A stretch of 64,000 bases of DNA, from positions 1 through 64,000 of IMG/VR virus record IMGVR_UViG_3300024336_000005. The stretch is one strand, 5' to 3'. The notes under the pieces are model-generated. The model worked only from the letters and a program-made list of their open reading frames with translations, made no database searches and had not been told where the DNA came from. The position numbers were made by a program, and so were the translations under genes. Shown in pieces: positions 53,483 to 64,000 of this stretch (position 1 is the first letter of the stretch; each line of letters starts with the position of its first letter).

Positions 53483-53946
53483 TGTAGATCTCCCCGCTGT
53501 TTTTTGCTATTAGGGCAAATTTGACAAGGAGAGGGCCAGAGGCGACCAAAGGTATAGGTCTCACTCTCGTCATGCCTGGACCAGCTAGTCCAAAGAACTG
53601 TAACGTACTCCCCTTCTTTAGTCCTCAGCCGATTAGAAGTCACAAAGTACCCCAACTCTTGTGGACTTCTTGCATGCATAACCCTTTCGATTTTTTCCCT
53701 ATCCTCAGGATGAATGATATCGGAGATAGACCTCCCTTTAATTTCACTCTTTGAATACCCCAGTTCACGCAAGGCCCTGGGGTTGCAGTCTTCTATGATC
53801 AAATCGTTGAAGATAAAGATCATGTCAGGACAAGAGTTGTAGAAGTCCTCGAGCTGAGAATTCCTCTTTGCCAACTCATCGTCCCTTCTGTTCAAAGCTA
53901 TCGTTAGCTTCTTCAGTTCGGTCAGTGTTTTCATGATTACATCCAA
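53479..53946 (-). CDS. Stand-alone PAS-domain protein
   Basis: FYNSCPDMIFIF..IEDCNPRALRELGYSKSEIKGRSISDIIHPEDR...NRLRTKEGEY. Confidence 0.85.
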   Translation of the reverse strand: MDVIMKTLTELKKLTIALNRRDDELAKRNSQLEDFYNSCPDMIFIFNDLIIEDCNPRALRELGYSKSEIKGRSISDIIHPEDREKIERVMHARSPQELGYFVTSNRLRTKEGEYVTVLWTSWSRHDESETYTFGRLWPSPCQICPNSKKQRGDLQ

Positions 53947-54009
53947 TAGGCGGGAGTACGGTTCAATAACAATAGAAAGCCCTTCCGGTGCGGGACGAGA
54001 ATGGGTTCT

Positions 54010-54113
54010 AAAAAAATATGGGAAAGGGAGGGAAATATAGGGGAAAAATAAGGGAAGGCTGAAGGATTGAATATAGAGGAAAATAGGGAAAACATAGGAA
54101 AAATAAGGGAGGA
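54010..54113 (+). repeat. Purine-rich degenerate tandem repeat at the strand switch
   Basis: GGAAAAATAAGGGA exact at 54042-54055 and 54097-54110, with related units around them; G4-type motif at 54020-54043. Confidence 0.7.
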
Positions 54114-54274
54114 CCTAGTGTAAGTGTTGGGAGTAGTAGGGTACCTATCGGTGCGAGCCCCTACCCCGACGACTTGGATAGCATGTTGCTATCACACTGG
54201 GCATAACGTCCAACAACCAGAGAAGTAGCAGGCATATCGTCTGTCTTCTCTATGCATGACTTAGGAGTTATATC

Positions 54275-55081
54275 ATGCAGTCCATCATCACCTCCATCAT
54301 CGCCCTGTCCGATCACCTGTACCACGCCCTCATCAACGCGATCGACACGCAGGATGCTGTGGCGCGCTGCTACGATGCGATCTGGTACTACCACGCACAG
54401 GTCCGCATCGACAACGGGCACAAGACCGAGACCTTCACCCGTGAGGGTGACAGCGTCATGCGTGAGGTGGTGTACAACGCCTCCATCATGGGCAAGGCCA
54501 GTCGCAAGCTGGCTGTCACCGGTCACGCGCAGGTGCTCATGGATGTGAGCAAGCTGTCCTTCACCCACACCTATGCTCGTGAGCCCCAGGCACACACGAG
54601 TCAGGTGAAGGTCACCATCGTGTACCCTGCGGCCAAGGCTGAGCCCACTGACCTCGAGGTGCGCCTCGCCTACGAGGAGTGGATGAACATCCAGGGCCAC
54701 CTGGAGCCCAAGGAGGAGGCCAAGGCTGAGGCTGATGCTGAGGTGGTGGAGGATGAGCACGTGGTGGAGGACTACTGGTACCTCATGGAGGACTACACCA
54801 AGGAGGATGCCCTCCACCTGGAGCGCAGCACGATGGGCAAGGACCGTAAGGCGTGGGATAGGCCCAACCGGGTGCTGGAGGTGGCCATGGAGGCACAGGC
54901 CAAGGCCCGTGAGGAGGAGGCAGAGGCCCTGTACCAGAGGGAGATGGCTGAGGCCAAGGCCCTCTGGGAGGCCAAGGTTGAGCTCTTCAAGAAGGTGAAG
55001 GGTGGCATGCCCAAGTACCCCCGAACCCACTATGGTAAGCCCATGCCTCGGGCCTACTGGAAGGAGGTGTTCGGGGGCTAG
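54275..55081 (+). CDS. Hypothetical early protein
   Basis: AGGAG RBS, strong GC3 bias. Confidence 0.8.
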   Translation: MQSIITSIIALSDHLYHALINAIDTQDAVARCYDAIWYYHAQVRIDNGHKTETFTREGDSVMREVVYNASIMGKASRKLAVTGHAQVLMDVSKLSFTHTYAREPQAHTSQVKVTIVYPAAKAEPTDLEVRLAYEEWMNIQGHLEPKEEAKAEADAEVVEDEHVVEDYWYLMEDYTKEDALHLERSTMGKDRKAWDRPNRVLEVAMEAQAKAREEEAEALYQREMAEAKALWEAKVELFKKVKGGMPKYPRTHYGKPMPRAYWKEVFGG

Positions 55082-55311
55082 GTAGCATAGGTATGGTGAC
55101 CCCTCTTCGGAGGGGGCTCCATATGGGTACATGTGGGGTGTATGGTGTATGCCATATGCTACTACGTGTACCCATATGGGGTACTGTATAGGTAGTAGGG
55201 TATAGCCCTGCTACTGGTACCACTGGGCATACCACATGGGGTGGTGTGCTATAGCAGGGGGGTGTATAGCCCGAGCCCCCCTCTGTGTATAGTAGGGCAT
55301 AGGGGTACTAT
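55082..55311 (+). other. Highly structured intergenic region
   Basis: CCCCTC-TTCG-GAGGGG; long stem CCATATGGGTAC..GTACCCATATGG; GTAGTAGGG..CCCTGCTAC. Confidence 0.55.
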
Positions 55312-55515
55312 ATGTACGTCATCAAGACCGAGTGGGCCCGCTACGTGCGAGGGACGTTGAGGGACGTTGAGGTGCGCCTCAGCGTCGTGACCCACGAGGA
55401 GGCCAAGCGGCTTCTCCGCACTGAGGTCCCCCTCGTGGGGAGGTCCCTCCAGGGGATCTCCTCCCATGTGGGGGACCGACTGAGCGTCCCCACCTGGACG
55501 CTGGTCAGCGAGTAA
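55312..55515 (+). CDS. Hypothetical early protein
   Basis: GC3 bias; AGGGG RBS. Confidence 0.65.
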   Translation: MYVIKTEWARYVRGTLRDVEVRLSVVTHEEAKRLLRTEVPLVGRSLQGISSHVGDRLSVPTWTLVSE

Positions 55516-55615
55516 GGTGATGGGGCACACGACTGTCGTGAGACAGCCGTGTGTTTAAACCACAGGACCGGTCCAAAGTCCGGTCCAAGCAGCCCCAAGG
55601 GGCATAGGAGTAGTC

Positions 55616-55801
55616 ATGATTGATTCCACCAAGCGGGTCACCCTCGATGAGGTGTTGGAGTTGTCGGGTGTGGAGGACCAGAGGGTCTTCGCCTGGGAGC
55701 AGTGGGTCGTCAAGGGCAAGGGGGTCCAGGTGACCCTGGACGTCGACTTCGACGAGAAGACCCACAAGTACAAGGAGATCCACATCTTCATCGGGCGTTA
55801 G
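55616..55801 (+). CDS. Hypothetical early protein
   Basis: AGGAG RBS, GC3 bias. Confidence 0.75.
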   Translation: MIDSTKRVTLDEVLELSGVEDQRVFAWEQWVVKGKGVQVTLDVDFDEKTHKYKEIHIFIGR

Positions 55802-55810
55802 CGCCCGATG

Positions 55811-55951
55811 AGCCCTTCCCCACCGGGCTAAAGGTGGGTGTTCCACATAGGCGCATCAGGGGTAACACCTTGGATGCGTCTTATATGGGGCATAGGCACA
55901 TGTTGTGCCACCCCTTGGTGCAGGTACGCACCATACACGCCCTATTGGGCA
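55811..55951 (+). ncRNA. Structured element family 2, copy 1 (pseudoknot plus conserved stems)
   Basis: Shares its architecture and 20-nt/16-nt blocks with 56270-56406. Confidence 0.55.
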
Positions 55952-55971
55952 CATTAGATAGGAGCTCACCC

Positions 55972-56247
55972 ATGAGCAAGTCCAACGTCGGCAACGAGAG
56001 CCAGTTCATCAACTTCGTTAATGGTTTGTGCGCGGGAAGCCTGTTGCAGTTCGCCATCATCGGCCTCCACACGGCCGCCTGGAAGAAGGACCAGCTGGGG
56101 ACTGCCAGGCTCCGGCAGTTGGGCCAGTACCACGATGACACCACCAGCCGGTTGATCCTCTCCAACGGCGTCGTCGTGGACGTGGATTGGGGCTTCCAAA
56201 AGGGGCAGTCCGCCCATCGCCTCTGGTGGCGCGTGCGCTCTAACTAG
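55972..56247 (+). CDS. Hypothetical early protein (start MSKSN)
   Basis: AGGAG RBS; the codon bias begins here rather than at 55702. Confidence 0.7.
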   Translation: MSKSNVGNESQFINFVNGLCAGSLLQFAIIGLHTAAWKKDQLGTARLRQLGQYHDDTTSRLILSNGVVVDVDWGFQKGQSAHRLWWRVRSN

Positions 56248-56269
56248 AGCAGCGCAGGCCGCCTGAATA

Positions 56270-56406
56270 AGCCCTCTCCCCCGTCGGGCTACAATAGACG
56301 GGGGATCACATGAGGACATCAGGGGTAGCACCTTGGCGTTCTGATGTGGTTTCTAGGGACATGCCGTCCCCATTGGGCAGTTTCGCCCATCACGCCCTAT
56401 TGGGCA
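56270..56406 (+). ncRNA. Structured element family 2, copy 2
   Basis: Covarying pseudoknot and conserved blocks. Confidence 0.55.
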
Positions 56407-56424
56407 TACATGAAAGGCCATACC

Positions 56425-57012
56425 ATGGCTACCTTCATTCGTTCCTCCCTCCTCCTCGCCCTCCTGTTCATCTGTGCCGGTTGCGGCACCAACCCGATGG
56501 CCTTCGGGCCGTTGGGGTGTTTCGTTTTCTCGTTCATCTTCCTCTTGGCGGGGCTGATGCCCACTAAGGCGGTGATCAAGGACGACGACGAGGAGACCGA
56601 GACGATGTCCTCCCCTGAGTGGGAGGTCCAGGAGTTCCCCGCTCTGGAGATCAAGGGGGAGGTGTGCTGGCCCGAGTGGCTGGAGATCTGCGAGGAGGCC
56701 TGGACCGAGCAGGCCAAGGCTGATGAGAACGCCCGTTTGGCGGCGTGGATCGAGCAGAGCAAGGCCACCATCAGGACCCGACAGGCCGAGTCCAAGCGGA
56801 TCGGCAACTGGATTGAGCAGCAGCGCATCAAGCGGTGGGTCGCGGCCCAGGAGGAGAAGGCCGCCAAGAAGGCGTGGAAGGACGCTGAGTACGCCCGCCG
56901 CTGCAAGGCGGCGCGTCAGGCCTGCGTGCTCGCCGAGCAGGAGGCGCAGGATGAACCCCTCCTGGAAGAGAGGATCGAGGAGTTCCGAAAGGAGATCCTC
57001 TCCTCCCTCTAG
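56425..57012 (+). CDS. Membrane protein with a lipoprotein-like/TM N-terminus and coiled-coil C-terminus (start MATFIR)
   Basis: GAAAGG RBS; LLLALLFICAGC and a second hydrophobic stretch. Confidence 0.7.
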   Translation: MATFIRSSLLLALLFICAGCGTNPMAFGPLGCFVFSFIFLLAGLMPTKAVIKDDDEETETMSSPEWEVQEFPALEIKGEVCWPEWLEICEEAWTEQAKADENARLAAWIEQSKATIRTRQAESKRIGNWIEQQRIKRWVAAQEEKAAKKAWKDAEYARRCKAARQACVLAEQEAQDEPLLEERIEEFRKEILSSL

Positions 57013-57147
57013 TTTAGAATCACGATTCGATAGTCGTCCTGAGAGCTGGGACGTTAAACTGCTCACATTAGCAGCAACCCATGGTGGGAAGCTGCTTAAC
57101 TGGGGTAGCCAATCCCCAAGCCCCGTGATGGGGTAAAGGAGTATACC

Positions 57148-58197
57148 GTGAAGAACATTGCCAAGAAGATTGGTTTCGTCTTGGGTGCCGCGATCGGCAT
57201 CATCATGTTGGCCGTGATCGCGAAGTTCGTGCTGGGCATCGTCCAGCACCTGGTCACCATGGCCCTCCTGGCCGGACCCCTCCTGTTCGCCTTCCCCGCC
57301 GCTCGGCGGCGGGTGTTGGTGCTGCTGAACAAGAAGGGCCAGAAGCTCAAGGAGGCCATCGAGGGGACGCCCGCCTGGAAGGGGCGGCAGGGCGTCAAGG
57401 ACGCCATCCAGGCGGGGCTTGAGAAGCAGTGGGAGTCGTTCAAGTCGGCCGCCAAGGCCGACGTGGAGGGGGAGGAGACCCAGGAGTTGTGCGACGGGTG
57501 CGGGAACATCCCGTTCTCCTGCTCCTGCGCGACGATGTCGCCGGAAGATGTGGCTGAGGCCGTCTGGCAGATGGAGGGGGAGCCTGCGCCCTGGCAGCCC
57601 ACCCTAATCGAGGGTGGGCTGGGGGAGGCCGTGGAGCTGTGCCCGGTCTTCGGGGTGGCCAAGCACTCGTGCGCCGGTTGTGACAACGGGCAGCACGAGG
57701 ACCCCAACTTCGTGGACGAGATGGTGGATGATGACGGCATCCCCGCACCGAAGGACGGTCAAGTGGCGTGCTCCACCTGTGGGTGGCCCCATGGGCCGAA
57801 TGGGTGTCGCAACTGTGACGACCCCATCTGCCTTGGCCGGGACGATGATATGTACGAGTACTGCGGCGGGTGTGGCGAGACTTTCGAGAGCTGCCACTGT
57901 TGTGGCGAGCATGAGGCGGTGAAGGTGGAGGTCAAGGTGGAGGAGAGGCAGTGCTCCTGTTGTGCCATCGAGGGCAACGCGAGGACGGAGGCGTACTGTT
58001 GGTTCCACTCCGAGCAGGAGCGGGAGGGGGCGCTCCTGTCGGTGGCGGAGGCCGAGGAGTTGGCCATCTGCGTGAAGGCCGCGCAGGACGCCGTGCGACT
58101 CCTGGACGACCGCTTGGAGTGGGCCGCCAAGGCCCACGCAGGGACCGACTTCGACGCCTGGTGGGCCTGCCGTCAGGGTTGGAAGGGGGAGAAGTGA
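57148..58197 (+). CDS. Membrane-anchored Cys-rich (multi zinc-finger-like) protein
   Basis: Two N-terminal TM segments; CDGC..CSC, CSTC..CRNC, CGGC..CHCC and other Cys clusters. Confidence 0.75.
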   Translation: MKNIAKKIGFVLGAAIGIIMLAVIAKFVLGIVQHLVTMALLAGPLLFAFPAARRRVLVLLNKKGQKLKEAIEGTPAWKGRQGVKDAIQAGLEKQWESFKSAAKADVEGEETQELCDGCGNIPFSCSCATMSPEDVAEAVWQMEGEPAPWQPTLIEGGLGEAVELCPVFGVAKHSCAGCDNGQHEDPNFVDEMVDDDGIPAPKDGQVACSTCGWPHGPNGCRNCDDPICLGRDDDMYEYCGGCGETFESCHCCGEHEAVKVEVKVEERQCSCCAIEGNARTEAYCWFHSEQEREGALLSVAEAEELAICVKAAQDAVRLLDDRLEWAAKAHAGTDFDAWWACRQGWKGEK

Positions 58198-58385
58198 GGA
58201 AGCTGAGCTGCGAGAAGGCGGTCAGGCTTTTGGCCTGTGCCTCCACGGTGGCTGGCTACTACGGGCCTATCCCGCCGGTCAAGCGGGATGAACTGGTTCA
58301 GGCCCTCGGGGTGACGCCCGAGGAGATCGATGCCTGGTGGAACAACCAGATGAGCATCGAGTGGGACGGCGCCTCCAAGCACTAG
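58194..58385 (+). CDS. Small HTH/homeodomain-like protein
   Basis: GTGA overlap start; KRDELVQALGVTPEEIDAWWNNQ. Confidence 0.55.
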   Translation: MRKLSCEKAVRLLACASTVAGYYGPIPPVKRDELVQALGVTPEEIDAWWNNQMSIEWDGASKH

Positions 58386-58668
58386 TCCCACAGCCGTACC
58401 TAGTCCGGCATTATAATAGACTAGGACTCCCTCCTGTTATCACGATCTCCTATCGTGGTATGAGAAGGGTGCTGAACAAGTGCCCTTACAATCTGTTCTC
58501 CATGGGTCATGGAGGGTCTAGTGTGTACCCAACACACTCCCTGGCTCTAGGGTTACCAAGAGCTAGTATGCACAACCCCGGCCAAAAACAGGGGGAGGAT
58601 AATGGCGTGTAACCGACGCTGCAAGTCCCGTATGGGACTGTTGCCCGAAAGGGCAGAAAGGCTCCAAC

Positions 58669-59649
58669 ATGAGCACCAAGAACTTCGACCTCGCTCAGAT
58701 CCTCGCCGATGTCACCAGCATCAACTTGGAGGCGCTGGTCGCCTCCAAGAAGGCCAAGGAGGAGGCCGAGAAGGTCGCCTCGAAGGAGGCCAAGAAGGCC
58801 AGGGAGGAGGCCGCCGCTTGGGCGGCGGCCAAGGCCGAGGAGAAGGCCAAGGAGGAGGCCGAGAAGCGGGCCGACCTGGCCCGCCTCAACCGGGAGGAGG
58901 CGGCCAGGAAGGAGGCCGCCAAGAAGGAGGCCATGAAGGCCCGCGCGCGGCTGGAGCACAGCTCCTACAGGCTCGGGCTGCTGGAGGGCCGGGTGGCCCT
59001 CCTGAGTCAGATCCAGGAGAACCTGGGGCGCAAGCTCCAGGGTATGCTGGAGGGGACGGCGGCCCAGCTGGCCGCCAAGGCCGAGGAGTTCCAGGCGGCG
59101 CGGGAGGACCTGATGGAGGCGACCAAGCGCCTCCAGGAGGAGAAGGACCTGGTGGAGGATCAGCGGATCTCCTTCGGGGAGGTGCTCCCCTTGCCCCGCC
59201 ACCAGGAGGCCGGCCGTCGGGCCGCGCGGGTCGAAGGGGGCGGGGCCCTGAAGGAGATCCAGGAGGAGGCCTTCTTCGCGGCCATCGAGGCCAAGAAGGA
59301 GGCCAAGGTGGCGCAGGCCATCGAGGCCTCCGAGGAGCTGGAGGGGCTGCTGGCTCAGCTGTCCAGCCGGCCCCGGCGCTCCATCACCCGCGCCCTGAGC
59401 CGGGGGGACATCTCCCCCGCCAAGGCCGTGGAGGAGGCGAAGGCCGCCATCGAGGCGGCCAAGCGGGTCCACCAGTTCGAAAAGGTGGAGGTGGTGACGA
59501 CCAAGGTCGGCAGGGCCTCCACCTTGAGGGACCAGGACGCGGCCATCCGGATGGCCGCAAAGGGTAAGAAGCTCTCCAAGGAGGAGGGCAAGAGCTCCAA
59601 CCCGAAGAAGATTGCGAAGCTGCGCCGTAAGGCCGCGCAGAAGAAGTAA
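58669..59649 (+). CDS. Ala/Glu/Lys-rich coiled-coil protein with a basic tail
   Basis: GAAAGG RBS, GC3 bias. Confidence 0.8.
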   Translation: MSTKNFDLAQILADVTSINLEALVASKKAKEEAEKVASKEAKKAREEAAAWAAAKAEEKAKEEAEKRADLARLNREEAARKEAAKKEAMKARARLEHSSYRLGLLEGRVALLSQIQENLGRKLQGMLEGTAAQLAAKAEEFQAAREDLMEATKRLQEEKDLVEDQRISFGEVLPLPRHQEAGRRAARVEGGGALKEIQEEAFFAAIEAKKEAKVAQAIEASEELEGLLAQLSSRPRRSITRALSRGDISPAKAVEEAKAAIEAAKRVHQFEKVEVVTTKVGRASTLRDQDAAIRMAAKGKKLSKEEGKSSNPKKIAKLRRKAAQKK

Positions 59650-59658
59650 TCTTCTCTC

Positions 59659-59827
59659 TTGCCCCGCTGAATAAGCGGGGCGGTCCCCCTCGTGGGATCT
59701 AGGCTCATCACATAGGTGGTGGTCCTAGACGTCACGAGGGTAGCCGAATAGGTTGCCTCATGACAGGTGGCGCTGAACAAGCGCCGCCGCTTAGCTTTGT
59801 GCTGAATAAGCGCAGAGCTTTACATTT
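59659..59827 (+). ncRNA. Structured element family 1, copy A (four boxB-like hairpins and one long stem)
   Basis: Aligns with 60791-60964 with compensatory and G-U changes. Confidence 0.65.
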
Positions 59828-59985
59828 GGAAGCGCCCACCACCGGGGCGCATTAGTAAAATACCGGGGTTAGCGTTGCTAGAGCGCTAATTAAATGGCTT
59901 GCGTTGTGAGCCGCTGGCAAGGGGATACTCCCCACAACGGAGCAATCATGCTCCACTTTGGTCGCAAGACCTGAAAGGCCACATC

Positions 59986-60783
59986 ATGGCCATCTTCAAC
60001 ACCATCAAGTCCTCCGCCTCCGCCACCGCCGAGAAGGGCTTGCTCGCCCTCGGGCGGGCCAGCTGCAGCCTCAACCTCCGGAGCCCCATGCTCCGGAAGT
60101 TGAACGCAGCGCCCTTGATGGCGGTGGCGCCCTCGCACATGCGGGGGGCGTGTGAGGAGCACATGGAGCGCATGAACAAGCGCTCCATGGAGGCCTGGGA
60201 GCAGGACTCCCTCGTGGGTATGGCGACTTACATCGCCGAGAACCCGGAGCCCCGGAAGGAGCTGGAGGACTGGATGGCCTTCGCCTGCCGGGTGGCCGCC
60301 TACCGGGCGGCCCAGGTGGGCGACGTCACCCAGGCGCTCGCCGGGATGGCTTCCCGTGCAGGGCTGAGCCGCACGACGGCCAACCTCTGGGGCAAGACGC
60401 GGGGTCTTGATGACTTCGCCGATGCCCTGGAGGCCCACGCAACCGTGGGCGACTGCAAGTGGTGCCAGCCGCACCCCTGTGGTTGCCACGCCAAGGCGGG
60501 CACGTGCCGCACTTGCGACATCACCATCTTCAGCGACAACCGGGGGTACGACCGGTCCATCTGCGTGCACTGCGATGAGGACCGCGTCCGCATCGAGGCC
60601 GACGTCGAGGCGTGGCTGGAGATGGCCCAGGAGAGGTTCAGCTCCTCCTCGGCCCTGAGCGTGGGGGAGCAGCGGGAGTGGATGGAGATGATGGTGAACA
60701 CCTTCATCCCCGGCCAGGTGGTGTTCACCTGGAGCGAGACGGTGGAGACGGGGGACGTCTACGAGGGTCCCATCCCCTTCTGA
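59986..60783 (+). CDS. Hypothetical protein with Cys clusters (start MAIFN)
   Basis: GAAAGG RBS; CKWC..CGC, CRTC, CVHC; acidic C-terminus ending IPF. Confidence 0.75.
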   Translation: MAIFNTIKSSASATAEKGLLALGRASCSLNLRSPMLRKLNAAPLMAVAPSHMRGACEEHMERMNKRSMEAWEQDSLVGMATYIAENPEPRKELEDWMAFACRVAAYRAAQVGDVTQALAGMASRAGLSRTTANLWGKTRGLDDFADALEAHATVGDCKWCQPHPCGCHAKAGTCRTCDITIFSDNRGYDRSICVHCDEDRVRIEADVEAWLEMAQERFSSSSALSVGEQREWMEMMVNTFIPGQVVFTWSETVETGDVYEGPIPF

Positions 60784-60790
60784 TAGTATT

Positions 60791-60964
60791 TTGCCCCGCT
60801 GAATAAGCGGGGCGGGCTTAGCTCTTGCTGAGCTCTAGACTCATCCCTACGGGGGTGGCTCTAGACATTAGCAAGAGCCGCTGTGTAAGCGGTAGTAGCT
60901 GATGGTTGTGGCGCTGAGCAAGCGCCACTTTGGAGCCTTGCTGAATAAGCAGGGCTTTACATTT
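60791..60964 (+). ncRNA. Structured element family 1, copy B
   Basis: Same order of stems as copy A; both end in GCTTTACATTT. Confidence 0.65.
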
Positions 60965-61157
60965 TGTGCCATGGGTCATGGCCGGCTTGGACTACCGTTT
61001 AGTCCAGGGCTTTGGTGGAGTAGCCCTAAACACTCCACCCTCATGATACTGAGGTAGTATCAAACCTCTAACCGTAGGTAACGGTAAGTTGGTATTTATT
61101 ATGTCCCCCGCTTGGTAAGCGGGTGCCAACGGACACAATCCTCGAAAGGGATTTACC

Positions 61158-64000
61158 ATGAGCAACAAGAACTTCGACTTCAACGCCAGCATCGTCAACC
61201 TCGCCAACCAGGAGGGTCTCCAGCCGGAGGCGTTGCTGGCCTTCGCCAACGGGGAGGGTCGCGACCTCTCCCGGATCAACGGGGGCAACTTCGCTCCCTA
61301 CAGCCGGGCGCTGTTGGTGCGCTTCCAGAAGGCCCAGGAGGAGGCCAAGGTGAACCAGGAGAAGGAGGACGGGGCGCTCAGCGTCATCCTGGCCAGCTGC
61401 CTGGAGCTCCCGGTGGGCGAGACCGTCGGTGAGAAGGCCTTGGCCTACGTCCGCAAGGAGGTGGGTGAGACCTGGACCAAGGCGTCCGTGATGGAGGCCT
61501 TGAAGAAGAAGGAGGCGGAACTCCACGCGGCCCAGAAGGAGCAGGAGGAGCTGTTGTGGGACCTCCACCGCAAGGCCCTGAAGGCGCACGTCGCCGAGAT
61601 CAAGGTCGATGCGAAGGATGGCCTGATCGATTGGCGCCACCTGTCGAAGGCCCTCGGTCGGATGATCGGCGACCGCGTGGTGAGCGAAGACTACGCCGCT
61701 GAGCTGGACCTCGCGGCCAACGTAGACATCGATGCCTTCAACAACTTGATCGATGCCATGAATGTCCTGCTGAAGGGACAGAAGATCTCCGAGGGGGAAG
61801 GGAAGGAGATCATCATGGCCGTCCGAAAGGGCACCGATCTGGCCGTCGCGGTGGGTCGGGTGTTGGAGAAGTGCAAGAACAAGGAGGAGGTCACTGAGGA
61901 GGAGGCCGTCATCGTGGAGGGGCTGGGTGCCAAGATCGACGCCCAGCGGGAGCAGGAGAAGAACCTGCAGCTCGACAAGGAGCTGGCGCCCAAGTGGTTC
62001 GACGCCTTGACCGACGAGGAGTGGAAGGCGATGAAGCACGCCCGCTTCGCGGCCATCCAGGAGACGGAGGAAGAGCTGGTCACCCGGATGCGGGCGCAGG
62101 AGTACGCCTTCGGGACGAGCGTGAAGATGGCCAAGATCATCTTCAACCTGGAGGTGACCGGGGTGGAGAGCTGGAAGCAGCTGATGCCCTACTACACCGA
62201 CGAGAACTTCGATGCTCAAATGGTGAGCATCGACGAGGGGCTGACCAAGTGGGACGCCCTGGAGACCACGAAGAAGGCCGCCAAGAAGGCCCAGAAGGAG
62301 CAGGACGTGAAGACCGACATCGAGACCCAGGTGGAGACGGCGATCAACGAGGGAAGCACCCTCACGGCGGAGGAGAAGGCGGAGGTCATGGAGAGCGAGC
62401 ACGACGAGAACAATCGGCTCCAGGTGGAGCTGTTCGAGAAGGAGCAGGCCGCCGAGAAGGCGGAGGCGCGGGAGAAGCTCGCCCGCATGCTGCGGGCGGC
62501 GTTGGGCCAGGGGTACATCACGAAGGAGGAGATGGCCGGGACGCTGAAGATGGCGGATGAGAAGGCGGTCGCCGAAGAGGTGGTCGAAGTCATGAAGAAG
62601 GCGGTCGACCGCCTCAACGAGTTGGCCAACGAGCGCAAGGCGCTCAAGGCCACCAAGACCGACGAGGAGACCTCCATGGAGGAGCAGATGCGCTGCATCC
62701 CCCGAGACCAGAAGAAGAACTTCTGGCACGCCGTGTGGACGGCGCTGCCGGAGGGCAGCGCGAAGGAGCAGGCCAAGAGGGTCCGCTCCGGGGTGAAGCG
62801 GAACGGCAGCCTGGGCGTCAAGCCCACCGCTGCCACCATGGTGGAGATCCAGAAGCTGGGGGCCGATTGGGTCACCAGCACCATCAAGAACCTGGGCGTC
62901 AAGACGACGCCCGTGAAGAAGGAGGCCCCCGTGGCCAAGCCCATCGAGACCGAGACCGTGACCACCCCCGTGATGGAGGAGAAGAAGATGAAGACGGCGA
63001 TCGAAAAGGCGATGGAGAAGACGGAGATGAAGGAAGAGGCCCCCACCGTGGAGGTGGCGATCAAGGAGGAGGCGGGCAGCACCGCCCGGCTGAACCAGAT
63101 GCTGGCCGAAAAGGTGGAGACGCTGGAGGAGCTCAGGGAGCTGGCCAAGGAGGCCGGACACGGCCGCATCGAGGCCAAGGCCTCGGCGGCGCTGCTGGCG
63201 GCGGAGCTCAAGATCGCCAAGGAGGCGCTCAACGAGGAGGGCACCGTGGGTGAGCCCACGGTCGAGTGCAAGGCGGGTCCCACCGTCGAGGCGGGTGAGC
63301 CCTGCCCGGTGGAGCCCAAGACCGATGAGCCCGAGATGGGCCGCATCGAGAAGGTCAGGCTGTGGTGGAAGGAGGCCGACTTCCTCGCCATGGCCAAGGA
63401 CTACAAGGAGCGGGCCATGAAGAAGGCCATGTGCCACCGGGAGCGGGTGGCGACGACCATGAAGCAGGACCGCAAGACCTACGAGGTCGCGGTGATGGGC
63501 TTCGAGCAGGCGCGCATCGCGGTTCACGCGGACAAGCACGTCCTGCTGCTGGGCCTGCTGGTCCGCAAGGGGAAGGCCGGCAAGCTGGCCCTCAAGTACA
63601 ACGAGGGCGACCTCGCCCTCAACATCACCGATGAGGAGAAGGCCGCACTGGCCAAGACCCTCTTGGGGATGACGAAGGACGACGCCAACGGCGCCTCCCA
63701 CGCCCTGCCGGGCATCAGCCTCTCCAAGGTGAACCGCGAGGAGATCGCGGCCAAGTGGGTGGAGAAGGCCATCGCGGGCTGGGAGAAGCTCGACATCGGC
63801 AAGAAGGCGTACATCCTCTGCCAGATGGAGGGGCGCACCAGCGTCTCCGTGGGGATGTTCAAGCCCGTGCGGACCGTGTACAACGCCCTGCGTGGTGGAG
63901 CGGTGTGGACCTGGGACCACTCGGGTGGTTGGGTGCTCTCCAAGGTGGACACGATCCGCCTGAAGCGGATCGTCAAGGGGCAGACCAGCCTGGCCAAGAA
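61158..64000 (+). CDS. Large early protein, >940 aa, runs off the window (absent from the ORF track)
   Basis: MSNKNFDFNASIVNLANQEG... is open to the window end, with strong GC3 bias; E/K/A-rich and helical. Confidence 0.85.
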   Translation, partial: MSNKNFDFNASIVNLANQEGLQPEALLAFANGEGRDLSRINGGNFAPYSRALLVRFQKAQEEAKVNQEKEDGALSVILASCLELPVGETVGEKALAYVRKEVGETWTKASVMEALKKKEAELHAAQKEQEELLWDLHRKALKAHVAEIKVDAKDGLIDWRHLSKALGRMIGDRVVSEDYAAELDLAANVDIDAFNNLIDAMNVLLKGQKISEGEGKEIIMAVRKGTDLAVAVGRVLEKCKNKEEVTEEEAVIVEGLGAKIDAQREQEKNLQLDKELAPKWFDALTDEEWKAMKHARFAAIQETEEELVTRMRAQEYAFGTSVKMAKIIFNLEVTGVESWKQLMPYYTDENFDAQMVSIDEGLTKWDALETTKKAAKKAQKEQDVKTDIETQVETAINEGSTLTAEEKAEVMESEHDENNRLQVELFEKEQAAEKAEAREKLARMLRAALGQGYITKEEMAGTLKMADEKAVAEEVVEVMKKAVDRLNELANERKALKATKTDEETSMEEQMRCIPRDQKKNFWHAVWTALPEGSAKEQAKRVRSGVKRNGSLGVKPTAATMVEIQKLGADWVTSTIKNLGVKTTPVKKEAPVAKPIETETVTTPVMEEKKMKTAIEKAMEKTEMKEEAPTVEVAIKEEAGSTARLNQMLAEKVETLEELRELAKEAGHGRIEAKASAALLAAELKIAKEALNEEGTVGEPTVECKAGPTVEAGEPCPVEPKTDEPEMGRIEKVRLWWKEADFLAMAKDYKERAMKKAMCHRERVATTMKQDRKTYEVAVMGFEQARIAVHADKHVLLLGLLVRKGKAGKLALKYNEGDLALNITDEEKAALAKTLLGMTKDDANGASHALPGISLSKVNREEIAAKWVEKAIAGWEKLDIGKKAYILCQMEGRTSVSVGMFKPVRTVYNALRGGAVWTWDHSGGWVLSKVDTIRLKRIVKGQTSLAK

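What the first reader, a model, noticed from the sequence alone, without database searches (positions are those of the whole stretch)
55811..56406. Second duplicated structured leader family
The leaders of 55972 and 56425 share the order: pseudoknot, CACAT, CATCAGGGGTA(A/G)CACCTTGG (55854-55873; 56317-56336), covarying hairpins (TGGTGC-AGGTAC-GCACCA vs TGGGC-AGTTTC-GCCCA), CACGCCCTATTGGGCA (55936-55951; 56391-56406), RBS. The adjacent genes are unrelated. Inference: a reusable expression cassette or regulatory RNA that may also promote shuffling of early genes.
Basis: partly seen in the sequence, partly recalled or inferred. Interest (0 to 1): 0.62.

Follow-up and report, generated by a model that had tools for sequence, protein, structure and literature searches.

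The report
Duplicated structured phage leader RNA
Two neighbouring, unrelated genes of an uncultured marine jumbo phage are each preceded by a diverged copy of the same ~150-170-base, five-hairpin RNA leader whose fold has been kept by compensating mutations; it is a real RNA element in no known family, and its function is untested.

Summary
Both shared blocks sit exactly where stated and occur nowhere else in the 204-kb phage genome. The whole stop-to-start spacers (55802-55971 and 56248-56424) are paralogous at about 68% identity. Both fold on the + strand into the same order: stop-codon hairpin, possible H-type pseudoknot, 19-bp interrupted hairpin H2, three small hairpins, Shine-Dalgarno, AUG.

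Selection has kept the structure. 96% of pair cells are paired and 7 pairs changed on both sides. A neutral simulation never reached this (p < 1e-5), so a neutral duplication is rejected.

The flanking proteins are unrelated ORFans, so one leader serves different genes. No Rfam family matches. There is no sigma-70-type promoter or intrinsic terminator. No homologue turned up in viral, metagenome, genome or cultured-phage collections; only identical copies of this phage were found. No RNA data exist.

A weak third member lies at 55093-55236. A Twister-P5 ribozyme (55516-55583) occupies the spacer between that member and leader A.

Best reading (about 0.4): an intercistronic mRNA punctuation module for processing, stability and translation start, comparable to T7 RNase III sites. 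Rivals are a protein operator, an antitermination RNA, a new ribozyme and a DNA-level recombination cassette. The shuffling idea is plausible but has no evidence.

The parts
55789..55810 (+). Leader A, hairpin H0 (9 bp). The UAG stop codon of gene 55616-55801 lies in its loop.
   Evidence: MFE fold; sequence
55811..55838 (+). Leader A, candidate H-type pseudoknot. S1 is 55811-15 with 55825-29. S2 is 55819-24 with 55833-38. Loops are 3, 0 and 3 nt.
   Evidence: S2 forms in folds 12 and 31; S1 forms in fold 55 and in RNAalifold. S2 covaries with copy B; S1 is invariant.
55843..55888 (+). Leader A, long hairpin H2 with basal (7 bp), middle (6 bp) and apical (6 bp) stems. The apex is the conserved 20-mer 55854-55873.
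55895..55909 (+). Leader A, hairpin H3 (5 bp). One C-G to G-C swap relative to B.
55916..55933 (+). Leader A, hairpin H4 (6 bp).
55936..55951 (+). Leader A, identical 16-mer that contains hairpin H5 (55939-42 with 55947-50, loop UAUU).
55960..55974 (+). Shine-Dalgarno AGGAG (55960-64) and the AUG (55972-74) of the 91-aa ORFan gene 55972-56247.
   Evidence: sequence; translation; GC3 0.89
56225..56263 (+). Leader B, compound hairpin H0 enclosing the UAG stop (56245-47) of gene 55972-56247.
56270..56304 (+). Leader B, candidate H-type pseudoknot. S1 is 56270-74 with 56286-90. S2 is 56278-85 with 56297-304. Loops are 3, 0 and 6 nt.
56305..56350 (+). Leader B, long hairpin H2. The apex is the conserved 20-mer 56317-56336.
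56356..56370 (+). Leader B, hairpin H3.
56374..56389 (+). Leader B, hairpin H4 (5 bp).
56391..56406 (+). Leader B, identical 16-mer with hairpin H5 (56394-97 with 56402-05).
56412..56427 (+). Shine-Dalgarno-like GAAAGG and the AUG (56425-27) of the 195-aa ORFan gene 56425-57012.
55093..55236 (+). Tentative third, much more diverged member (leader Z, before gene 55312-55515). Same order of GC hairpin, very long hairpin, hairpin and the UGGGCAUA end.
   Evidence: Covariance model R2: 20.2 bits, E about 0.003 genome-wide, full-length match. Fold z-score -5.4.

Best explanation
Leaders A and B are paralogous copies of one cis-acting structured RNA; Z is a possible third. They are read from the + strand as intercistronic spacers of a long operon in the GC-rich ORFan island of a marine jumbo phage.

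Shown: the whole stop-to-start spacer was copied and now serves unrelated genes, and its five-helix fold is kept by selection.

Inferred mechanism: the module punctuates the polycistronic mRNA.
- The 19-bp interrupted hairpin H2, with its sequence-conserved apex, is the recognition or cleavage site for a double-strand-specific endonuclease. This would be host RNase III or a phage factor.
- The GC-rich H0 plus pseudoknot then caps the 3' end of the upstream message.
- H3-H5 form a protected 5' end that leaves the Shine-Dalgarno free 10-15 nt downstream.

This is the logic of the RNase III signals between T7 early genes. It also matches the Twister-P5 self-cleaving ribozyme that punctuates the preceding spacer.
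For: Paralogy and uniqueness.

Same fold in both copies, with z-scores from -3.3 to -4.4.

Compensatory change: 7 pairs changed on both sides and 96% of cells paired, against 32-53% in slid controls. The neutral simulation gave p < 1e-5.

Strand: the + strand is 4.5 and 7.6 kcal/mol more stable than the - strand, and the conserved apex has G-U pairs.

Non-coding status: the spacers show no GC3 periodicity (0.63-0.68), whereas the genes reach 0.86-0.95.

Shine-Dalgarno: it is unpaired in the local folds.

Context: a long hairpin is also the main feature of leader Z (about 31 bp). A bona fide Twister-P5 lies in the spacer between Z and A (50.7 bits against a gathering score of 37.6). No promoter or terminator consensus lies in A or B, which fits read-through transcription.
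Against: No RNA data exist for this phage, so transcription, polycistrony and cleavage are all unobserved. The host and its RNases are unknown, and the phage encodes no recognisable RNase III. H2 is at the lower length limit for RNase III substrates and is interrupted. The strict sequence conservation of the H2 apex, S1 and H5, stems included, goes beyond what a plain processing hairpin needs; it could instead mark a protein site, tertiary contacts or alternative pairings. The comparison rests on only two paralogues, and the alignment used for counting was fitted to the model.
Confidence: 0.4

Rival explanations
1. Operator for an RNA-binding protein. The invariant H2 apex (6-bp stem plus GUARCA loop) and the invariant H5 hairpin next to the Shine-Dalgarno would be binding sites for a phage or host protein. 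That protein would co-regulate translation or stability of both genes, as in the T4 gene 32 pseudoknot or coat-protein operators.
For: Sequence, not just pairing, is conserved in the H2 apex, S1 and H5, while the other stems covary. H5 sits 9-10 nt upstream of the Shine-Dalgarno. A degenerate second copy of the H5 unit lies at the H3/H4 junction (56364).
Against: No candidate binding protein was identified; all neighbouring proteins are ORFans without domains. Conservation of two short blocks between two paralogues is only marginally beyond chance clustering (16-mer).
Confidence: 0.2
2. Cis-acting transcription antitermination RNA, acting like HK022 put or as part of a nut-like system. It would let RNA polymerase read through the many hairpins of this operon.
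For: It is a duplicated structured RNA in the leader region of one operon. Seven boxB-like hairpins (stem, CUGA-R-Y-AAG, stem) cluster 2-5 kb downstream at 58472-60941, some followed by U-rich tails. Leader B carries the same 9-mer at 56263, without a stem.
Against: The copies sit in tandem, 460 nt apart, in one transcription unit rather than one per operon. No terminator-like hairpin with a U-run lies directly downstream of A or B. There is no sequence resemblance to known put or nut elements, and no Rfam hit.
Confidence: 0.08
3. A new class of self-cleaving ribozyme. A pseudoknot plus multi-helix core would cut the polycistronic RNA, as the twister does one spacer upstream.
For: It lies within 230 nt of a Twister-P5. 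Genes for self-cleaving ribozymes are reported to cluster with phage genes and with other ribozymes (PMC4604425). The element has a pseudoknot and invariant segments typical of catalytic cores.
Against: No similarity to hammerhead, twister, twister-sister, pistol, hatchet or HDV-like models even at E <= 10. The family has 2-3 members in a single genome, so no conserved core can be defined. Much of the invariant sequence is ordinary helix.
Confidence: 0.08
4. DNA-level element. The repeats would serve mainly as recombination substrates or promoter cassettes that move ORFan genes, like the PeSL cassettes of T4-type phages, with RNA structure incidental.
For: Direct repeats flank a 91-aa ORFan. 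The leaders precede unrelated ORFans. This is the layout described for PeSLs (PMC2839356).
Against: No sigma-70-like promoter. The longest identical run is only 16 nt, and overall identity is 68%. G-U pairs and the + over - stability difference point to RNA. No deletion joint or presence/absence variant appears in 4 laid runs. There are only 2-3 copies against about 50 PeSLs per genome. No single-subunit RNA polymerase or sigma factor was detected (the PF00940 control did not ring, so that absence is weak).
Confidence: 0.1
5. Metabolite- or ion-sensing riboswitch, or a thermosensor, that uses alternative pairings of the four invariant GCCC/GGGC segments (S1 5', pseudoknot loop, H5 5', H5 3').
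For: All four mutually complementary segments are invariant while other stems covary. The full-length MFE folds pair the 5' AGCCC region with the Shine-Dalgarno region.
Against: No Rfam riboswitch hit. The downstream genes are unrelated ORFans with no metabolic theme. The Shine-Dalgarno pairing differs between A and B and is weak in B.
Confidence: 0.04
6. A neutral remnant of a recent duplication with no function.
For: Only two clear copies exist, and they are adjacent.
Against: With 21 substitutions in stem columns, 36 of 38 pairs are kept and 7 pairs are doubly changed. The simulated neutral mean is about 23.5 and the maximum 33 in 100,000 trials. Slid and shuffled controls give the same answer. 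The genes between and after the copies share no similarity, although unpaired leader columns are still 61% identical.
Confidence: 0.03

Closest known systems
PeSL (promoter-early stem-loop) cassettes of T4-type phages (PMC2839356, PMC4122927)
   Same: A repeated intergenic module running from the stop codon of one gene to the Shine-Dalgarno and start codon of the next. It sits in front of unrelated ORFans in a plastic genome region and contains stem-loops with G-U pairs.
   Different: PeSLs are defined by a strong sigma-70-like promoter plus one terminator stem-loop, occur about 50 times per genome, and have demonstrated recombination products. Here there is no promoter consensus. The element has five helices with a possible pseudoknot and 2-3 copies, and no recombinant was seen.
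RNase III processing signals between the early genes of phage T7 (R0.3-R1.3; established knowledge, not re-read here)
   Same: A family of related, irregular hairpins of about 20 bp, placed between consecutive cistrons of one early operon. They cut the polycistronic RNA and leave stabilising hairpins at the new ends.
   Different: T7 sites are single hairpins. This module adds a pseudoknot and three more hairpins. Cleavage is untested and the host is unknown.
Twister-P5 self-cleaving ribozyme (Rfam RF02684), present one spacer upstream
   Same: A structured, pseudoknotted RNA in an intercistronic spacer of the same operon. It probably has the same role of punctuating the transcript.
   Different: The leaders give no score against any twister or other ribozyme model. 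Their architecture is different.
HK022 put RNAs and lambda/P22 nut (boxB) sites (established knowledge)
   Same: Paralogous structured RNA elements in phage early leaders that act in cis on their own transcript.
   Different: put and nut elements occur one per divergent operon and consist of two stem-loops or boxA plus boxB. A and B are tandem and five-helix, and they lack a formed boxB hairpin.
T4 gene 32 leader pseudoknot (translational operator; established knowledge)
   Same: An H-type pseudoknot at the 5' edge of a phage mRNA leader, upstream of the ribosome-binding site.
   Different: The gene 32 operator is followed by an unstructured A/U-rich tract and regulates its own gene. Here four hairpins follow, and two unrelated genes are served.

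Membership tests
Any Rfam 15 family (including twister, twister-sister, pistol, hatchet, hammerhead, HDV-like, riboswitches) | Covariance-model score at or above the gathering threshold | tested here: not met
   Nothing lies inside the body of either leader even at E <= 10. The only overlap is a noise hit on the H0 hairpin at the 5' edge of leader A (CRISPR-DR29, 55785-55823, E 1.4).
PeSL cassette | Sigma-70-like -35/-10 promoter inside the repeat | tested here: not met
   no promoter-like site on the + strand anywhere in 53500-62000.
PeSL cassette | Stem-loop acting as a terminator or attenuator | tested here: inconclusive
   GC-rich hairpins are present (H0, S2), but no U-run follows them, and the consensus terminator scan finds none in A or B. 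Function was not assayed.
PeSL cassette | Many copies, upstream of ORFans in a plastic region, ending in a Shine-Dalgarno and start codon | tested here: inconclusive
   The ORFan association and the Shine-Dalgarno/start end are met. Only 2-3 copies exist.
PeSL cassette | Recombination between copies (indels, mini-circles) | tested here: not met
   no joints in the contigs of 4 runs. This is a weak test, because contigs drop rare variants.
RNase III processing signal | About two helical turns of mostly double-stranded RNA in an intercistronic hairpin | tested here: inconclusive
   H2 has 19 bp in three segments separated by 1-nt bulges or mismatches. Leader Z has about 31 bp.
RNase III processing signal | Cleavage by RNase III | not testable with these tools
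   No RNA runs are available.
H-type pseudoknot | Two stems, with the loop of one pairing outside it, both supported by covariation | tested here: inconclusive
   S2 has 2 doubly changed pairs and a length change. S1 (5 bp) is identical in A and B, so it is untestable. In A, the 3-nt loop 3 is short for crossing a 5-bp stem.
lambda/P22-type nut site | boxB hairpin with a GNRNA-type pentaloop | tested here: not met
   Leader B has the loop 9-mer at 56263 but fewer than 2 flanking stem pairs. Leader A lacks it.
Self-cleaving ribozyme (new class) | Site-specific self-scission | not testable with these tools
   Needs an in-vitro transcription and cleavage assay.

The most novel reading that the evidence does not exclude
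Leaders A and B (with Z) are members of an undescribed catalytic or polymerase-modifying RNA class: either a new self-cleaving ribozyme or a put-like antitermination RNA. On this reading they work alongside the twister ribozyme and the boxB-like hairpins, and the phage runs a long ORFan operon almost entirely through RNA-encoded punctuation.
Probability: 0.12. Interest if true: 0.8.

Novelty: new variant of a known kind. Interest (0 to 1): 0.42.

Why it matters
If the module is a processing or stability cassette, this 7-kb stretch (54.2-61.2 kb) is an unusually dense natural set of RNA 'punctuation marks' in a phage operon. It holds a twister ribozyme, two or three copies of this five-helix leader, a second duplicated leader family and seven boxB-like hairpins. 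That makes it a good place to look for new ribozymes or antitermination RNAs. It would also be a source of portable, insulated 5' leaders for synthetic operons.

It further shows that a complex RNA fold, and not only a promoter-terminator pair as in PeSLs, can be the reusable unit placed in front of new ORFan genes.

The finding rests on a single uncultured genome, so its generality is unknown.

Tried and rejected
1. Known RNA families. Rfam at gathering threshold and at E <= 10 gave nothing on the leaders.

2. Homologues elsewhere.
- Exact-pattern scans of viral contigs, metagenome contigs and GTDB genomes, screened with covariance models R1 and R2.
- blastn against cultured phages.
- Only identical copies of this phage were found.
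- One 19.6-bit hit (L016) is the EHALLG motif in what looks, from my reading of the sequence, like a DnaB-type helicase gene.

3. Relatives through proteins. The 91-aa and 195-aa proteins and the 1278-aa neighbour have no relatives. Pfam gave nothing for the nine island proteins. PHROGs gave only one weak hit, for the 195-aa protein, to a 'toxin' family (E 0.0013).

4. Expression and natural variants. No RNA run holds the stretch. Contigs of 4 further seawater runs are identical, with no joints.

5. Phage-polymerase promoter idea. A remembered resemblance of the H5 block to the cyanophage Syn5 promoter was only a lead. No single-subunit RNA polymerase was detected (control silent). The Syn5-like 15-mer has no good match, and the block has just two copies. 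Dropped.

6. Recoding.
- Reading through the UAG adds only 9 codons in A and 21 in B before the next stop (sequence).
- The frame that is open across leader A (ORF 55702-56247) is the -1 frame of the upstream gene. No slippery heptamer precedes the pseudoknot, and B has no equivalent.

7. Leader peptides. The two conserved blocks are read in different relative frames in A and B, and the indels are not multiples of three.

8. Phage-encoded helpers. RNase III, RtcB and sigma factor were all not detected.

Full report
**Source and setting**

The window is bases 1-64000 of a 204,008-bp virus record rated complete. It is a tailed phage with capsid, cement and T4-type terminase domains. Its large terminase is only about 30% identical to that of any cultured phage. 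It carries 28 Rfam tRNA matches and a tmRNA. It is found only in seawater and marine metagenomes.

Bases 1-54000 have about 50% G+C. The long ORFs there (at least 350 aa) lie on the - strand. From about 54.2 kb the genes run on the + strand, and up to about 82 kb G+C rises to 0.55-0.64. The genes in this island have GC3 of 0.86-0.95, are ORFans, and are separated by spacers of 100-470 nt.

**Checking the observation**

The similarity is not limited to the blocks. The complete spacers 55802-55971 (A) and 56248-56424 (B) align from just after the upstream stop codon to the start codon. Identity is 68% over 142 aligned columns.

Each is preceded by a Shine-Dalgarno-like purine run. The spacers lack the strong third-position G+C bias of the flanking genes, so they are non-coding.

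The sequence is reproduced in independent assemblies and in contigs of at least 14 runs, so it is not an assembly artefact.

**Structure**

Folded alone, each leader gives the same series of elements:
- H0, a hairpin that encloses the upstream UAG.
- A GC-rich hairpin (S2) whose loop can pair with the five bases just upstream (S1). Together they would make an H-type pseudoknot with loops of 3/0/3 nt in A and 3/0/6 nt in B.
- H2, a 46-nt hairpin of three stacked stems (7+6+6 bp in A; 7+5+6 bp in B, where the middle stem is AGGAC/GUUCU) with single-base interruptions. Its apical stem and hexaloop are the conserved 20-mer.
- H3, H4 and H5.
- A free Shine-Dalgarno 9-10 nt after H5 in both leaders.

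Fold z-scores are -3.3 to -4.4 on the + strand and -2.4 to -2.8 on the - strand. The + strand is 4.5 and 7.6 kcal/mol more stable. The conserved apex holds two G-U pairs that would be mismatches on the other strand. The element is therefore an RNA (or single-stranded) feature of the + strand, which is the coding strand.

**Is the structure selected?**

I built a covariance model from copy A with a hand-checked structure of 40 pairs. It finds B at 71 bits (E about 3e-19) and nothing else in the genome.

On the resulting alignment:
- 96% of pair cells are standard pairs.
- 7 pairs are changed on both sides and 2 on one side.
- With the 3' partners slid by 1-3 columns, only 32-53% of cells pair, and 0-2 pairs are doubly changed.

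In a simulation that places the observed 21 stem substitutions at random, a mean of about 23.5 of 38 pairs survive. The maximum was 33 in 100,000 trials. The observed value is 36, with 7 compensatory pairs.

RNAalifold on a structure-blind MAFFT alignment independently recovers S1, H2 and H5.

Two caveats apply. There are only two sequences, and the counting alignment was fitted to the model.

S1, the H2 apex and H5 are invariant, so they carry no covariation information. The pseudoknot therefore remains a plausible inference, not a demonstrated feature.

**Reuse before unrelated genes**

The proteins downstream of the leaders (91 aa and 195 aa) share no similarity with each other. Nor do the proteins upstream of them (61 aa and 91 aa). 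Neither the 91-aa nor the 195-aa protein has a relative among 5.8 billion proteins.

Unpaired leader columns are still 61% identical. Duplicated genes of the same age should still be recognisable, so the leader was copied or recombined independently of its genes. All three genes have the same extreme GC3, so none looks recently imported.

**A possible third member and the neighbourhood**

A model built from A plus B (R2) gives a full-length match of 20.2 bits at 55093-55236, with E about 0.003 for the genome. This is the spacer before gene 55312. That leader (Z) is very strongly structured (z -5.4). It has the same order: a GC hairpin, a very long hairpin of about 31 bp, further hairpins and a UGGGCAUA end. 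I treat it as tentative.

The spacer between Z and A holds a Twister-P5 ribozyme at 55516-55583 (50.7 bits; gathering score 37.6). So three or four consecutive spacers each carry an elaborate RNA element, and one of them is a known self-cleaver.

The 7-mer GGGCATA occurs six times in these first spacers, out of 12 + strand copies in the genome by the k-mer count. It usually forms the 3' side of a small GC hairpin shortly before the Shine-Dalgarno.

Further downstream lie a second duplicated leader pair (59650-59898 and 60784-61157) and seven hairpins with CUGA-R-Y-AAG loops. Those loops resemble lambda/P22 boxB.

**What it is not**

- No Rfam family matches at any threshold used.
- No sigma-70-type promoter or intrinsic terminator lies in A or B.
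- No single-subunit RNA polymerase, sigma factor, RNase III or RtcB was detected in the phage. The polymerase control was silent, so that absence is weak.
- Recoding is unlikely. Read-through frames close after 9 and 21 codons. No slippery site precedes the pseudoknot. The open -1 frame across A has no counterpart in B.
- No conserved leader peptide exists.

**Comparative data**

Pattern scans of IMG/VR, JGI metagenomes and GTDB genomes, screened with the models, and blastn against cultured phages returned only identical copies of this phage or chance 16-18-mers. Contigs from four further seawater runs show no substitution, indel or joint across 54000-58200. So A against B (plus Z) is all the comparative evidence there is. 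The shuffling idea cannot be tested.

**Mechanism**

Shown: a paralogous, + strand, structure-constrained, non-coding leader is reused before unrelated genes.

Inferred (about 0.4): an intercistronic punctuation module.
- H2 would be a double-strand endonuclease or protein recognition site.
- H0 plus the pseudoknot would protect the 3' end of the upstream message.
- H3-H5 would form the stable 5' end that presents the Shine-Dalgarno.

Three things support this reading:
- The analogy with T7 early RNase III signals (established knowledge).
- The long hairpins common to Z, A and B.
- The twister in the preceding spacer.

The strict sequence conservation of the H2 apex, S1 and H5 fits a protein operator equally well (0.2). 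It also leaves room for an antitermination RNA (0.08), a new ribozyme (0.08) or a switch using the four invariant GCCC/GGGC segments (0.04). Ribozyme genes are reported to cluster with phage genes and with each other (PMC4604425). A DNA-level PeSL-like recombination cassette (PMC2839356, PMC4122927) matches the layout but fails the promoter criterion and has no recombinants (0.1). A neutral duplication is rejected (0.03).

**Verdict**

This is a real, unclassified structured leader family with 2-3 members, confined so far to one uncultured marine jumbo phage. It is a new variant of a known kind of phage feature, the repeated intercistronic regulatory cassette. Its interest is moderate: the function is unknown and there is no phylogenetic breadth. 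It does sit in a notably RNA-rich operon beside a twister ribozyme, and simple in-vitro tests would be worthwhile.

Noticed in passing
window 55516-55583 (+): Twister-P5 self-cleaving ribozyme (RF02684, 50.7 bits against a gathering score of 37.6). It fills the spacer between genes 55312-55515 and 55616-55801. It is the only non-tRNA/tmRNA Rfam hit in the 204-kb genome.
   Followed up: partly
window 58472, 59667, 59773, 59802, 60799, 60914, 60941 (+): Seven hairpins with 6-10-bp stems closing a CUGA-R-Y-AAG loop. In form they resemble lambda/P22 boxB, and some are followed by U-rich tails. They are clustered in the spacers of 58.4-61 kb. Leader B carries the same 9-mer at 56263, without a stem.
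   Followed up: partly
They include an identical 25-mer at 59659 and 60791.
   Followed up: no
window 55082-55311 (+): Leader Z is extremely structured (MFE -126.5 kcal/mol, z -5.4), with a near-perfect hairpin of about 31 bp. It is a weak full-length match to the A/B model at 55093-55236.
   Followed up: partly
window 54199, 55225, 55295, 55600, 55888, 56402 (+): GGGCATA is about 45-fold enriched in the first spacers of the operon (6 of the 12 + strand genome copies counted). It is usually the 3' side of a small GC hairpin 10-20 nt before the Shine-Dalgarno. It may be a common processing or translation-start signal.
   Followed up: partly
G000 about 54-82 kb (window 54000-64000 and L003): A G+C-rich island (0.55-0.64 against 0.44-0.52 elsewhere) of + strand ORFans with GC3 of 0.86-0.95. 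Many are low-complexity and rich in Glu, Ala and Lys. It begins at the strand-switch point.
   Followed up: no
window 54031-54110: Three purine-rich direct repeats of about 25 nt (GGAAA-ATA-GGGA type) in the divergent region between the - strand genes and the + strand operon. This may be a promoter, regulator or origin region.
   Followed up: no
window 58657-58692 and 61146-61181: The ribosome-binding regions and first codons of genes 58669 and 61158 are 81% identical (MSTKNFDL and MSNKNFDF). These two large repeat-rich proteins may therefore be paralogues.
   Followed up: no
L004 2069-2690 (G000 about 85.9-86.5 kb) and L004-L006: An Rfam tmRNA hit (83.5 bits) spans 622 nt, so it is probably interrupted or permuted. 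ARAGORN did not call it. There are also 28 Rfam tRNA matches spread over about 84-132 kb.
   Followed up: no
window 55702-56247 (+): The reading frame of gene 55972 stays open backwards through the whole of leader A, and public gene calls start it at 55870 (125 aa). The GC3 profile and the Shine-Dalgarno indicate that the true start is 55972.
   Followed up: yes
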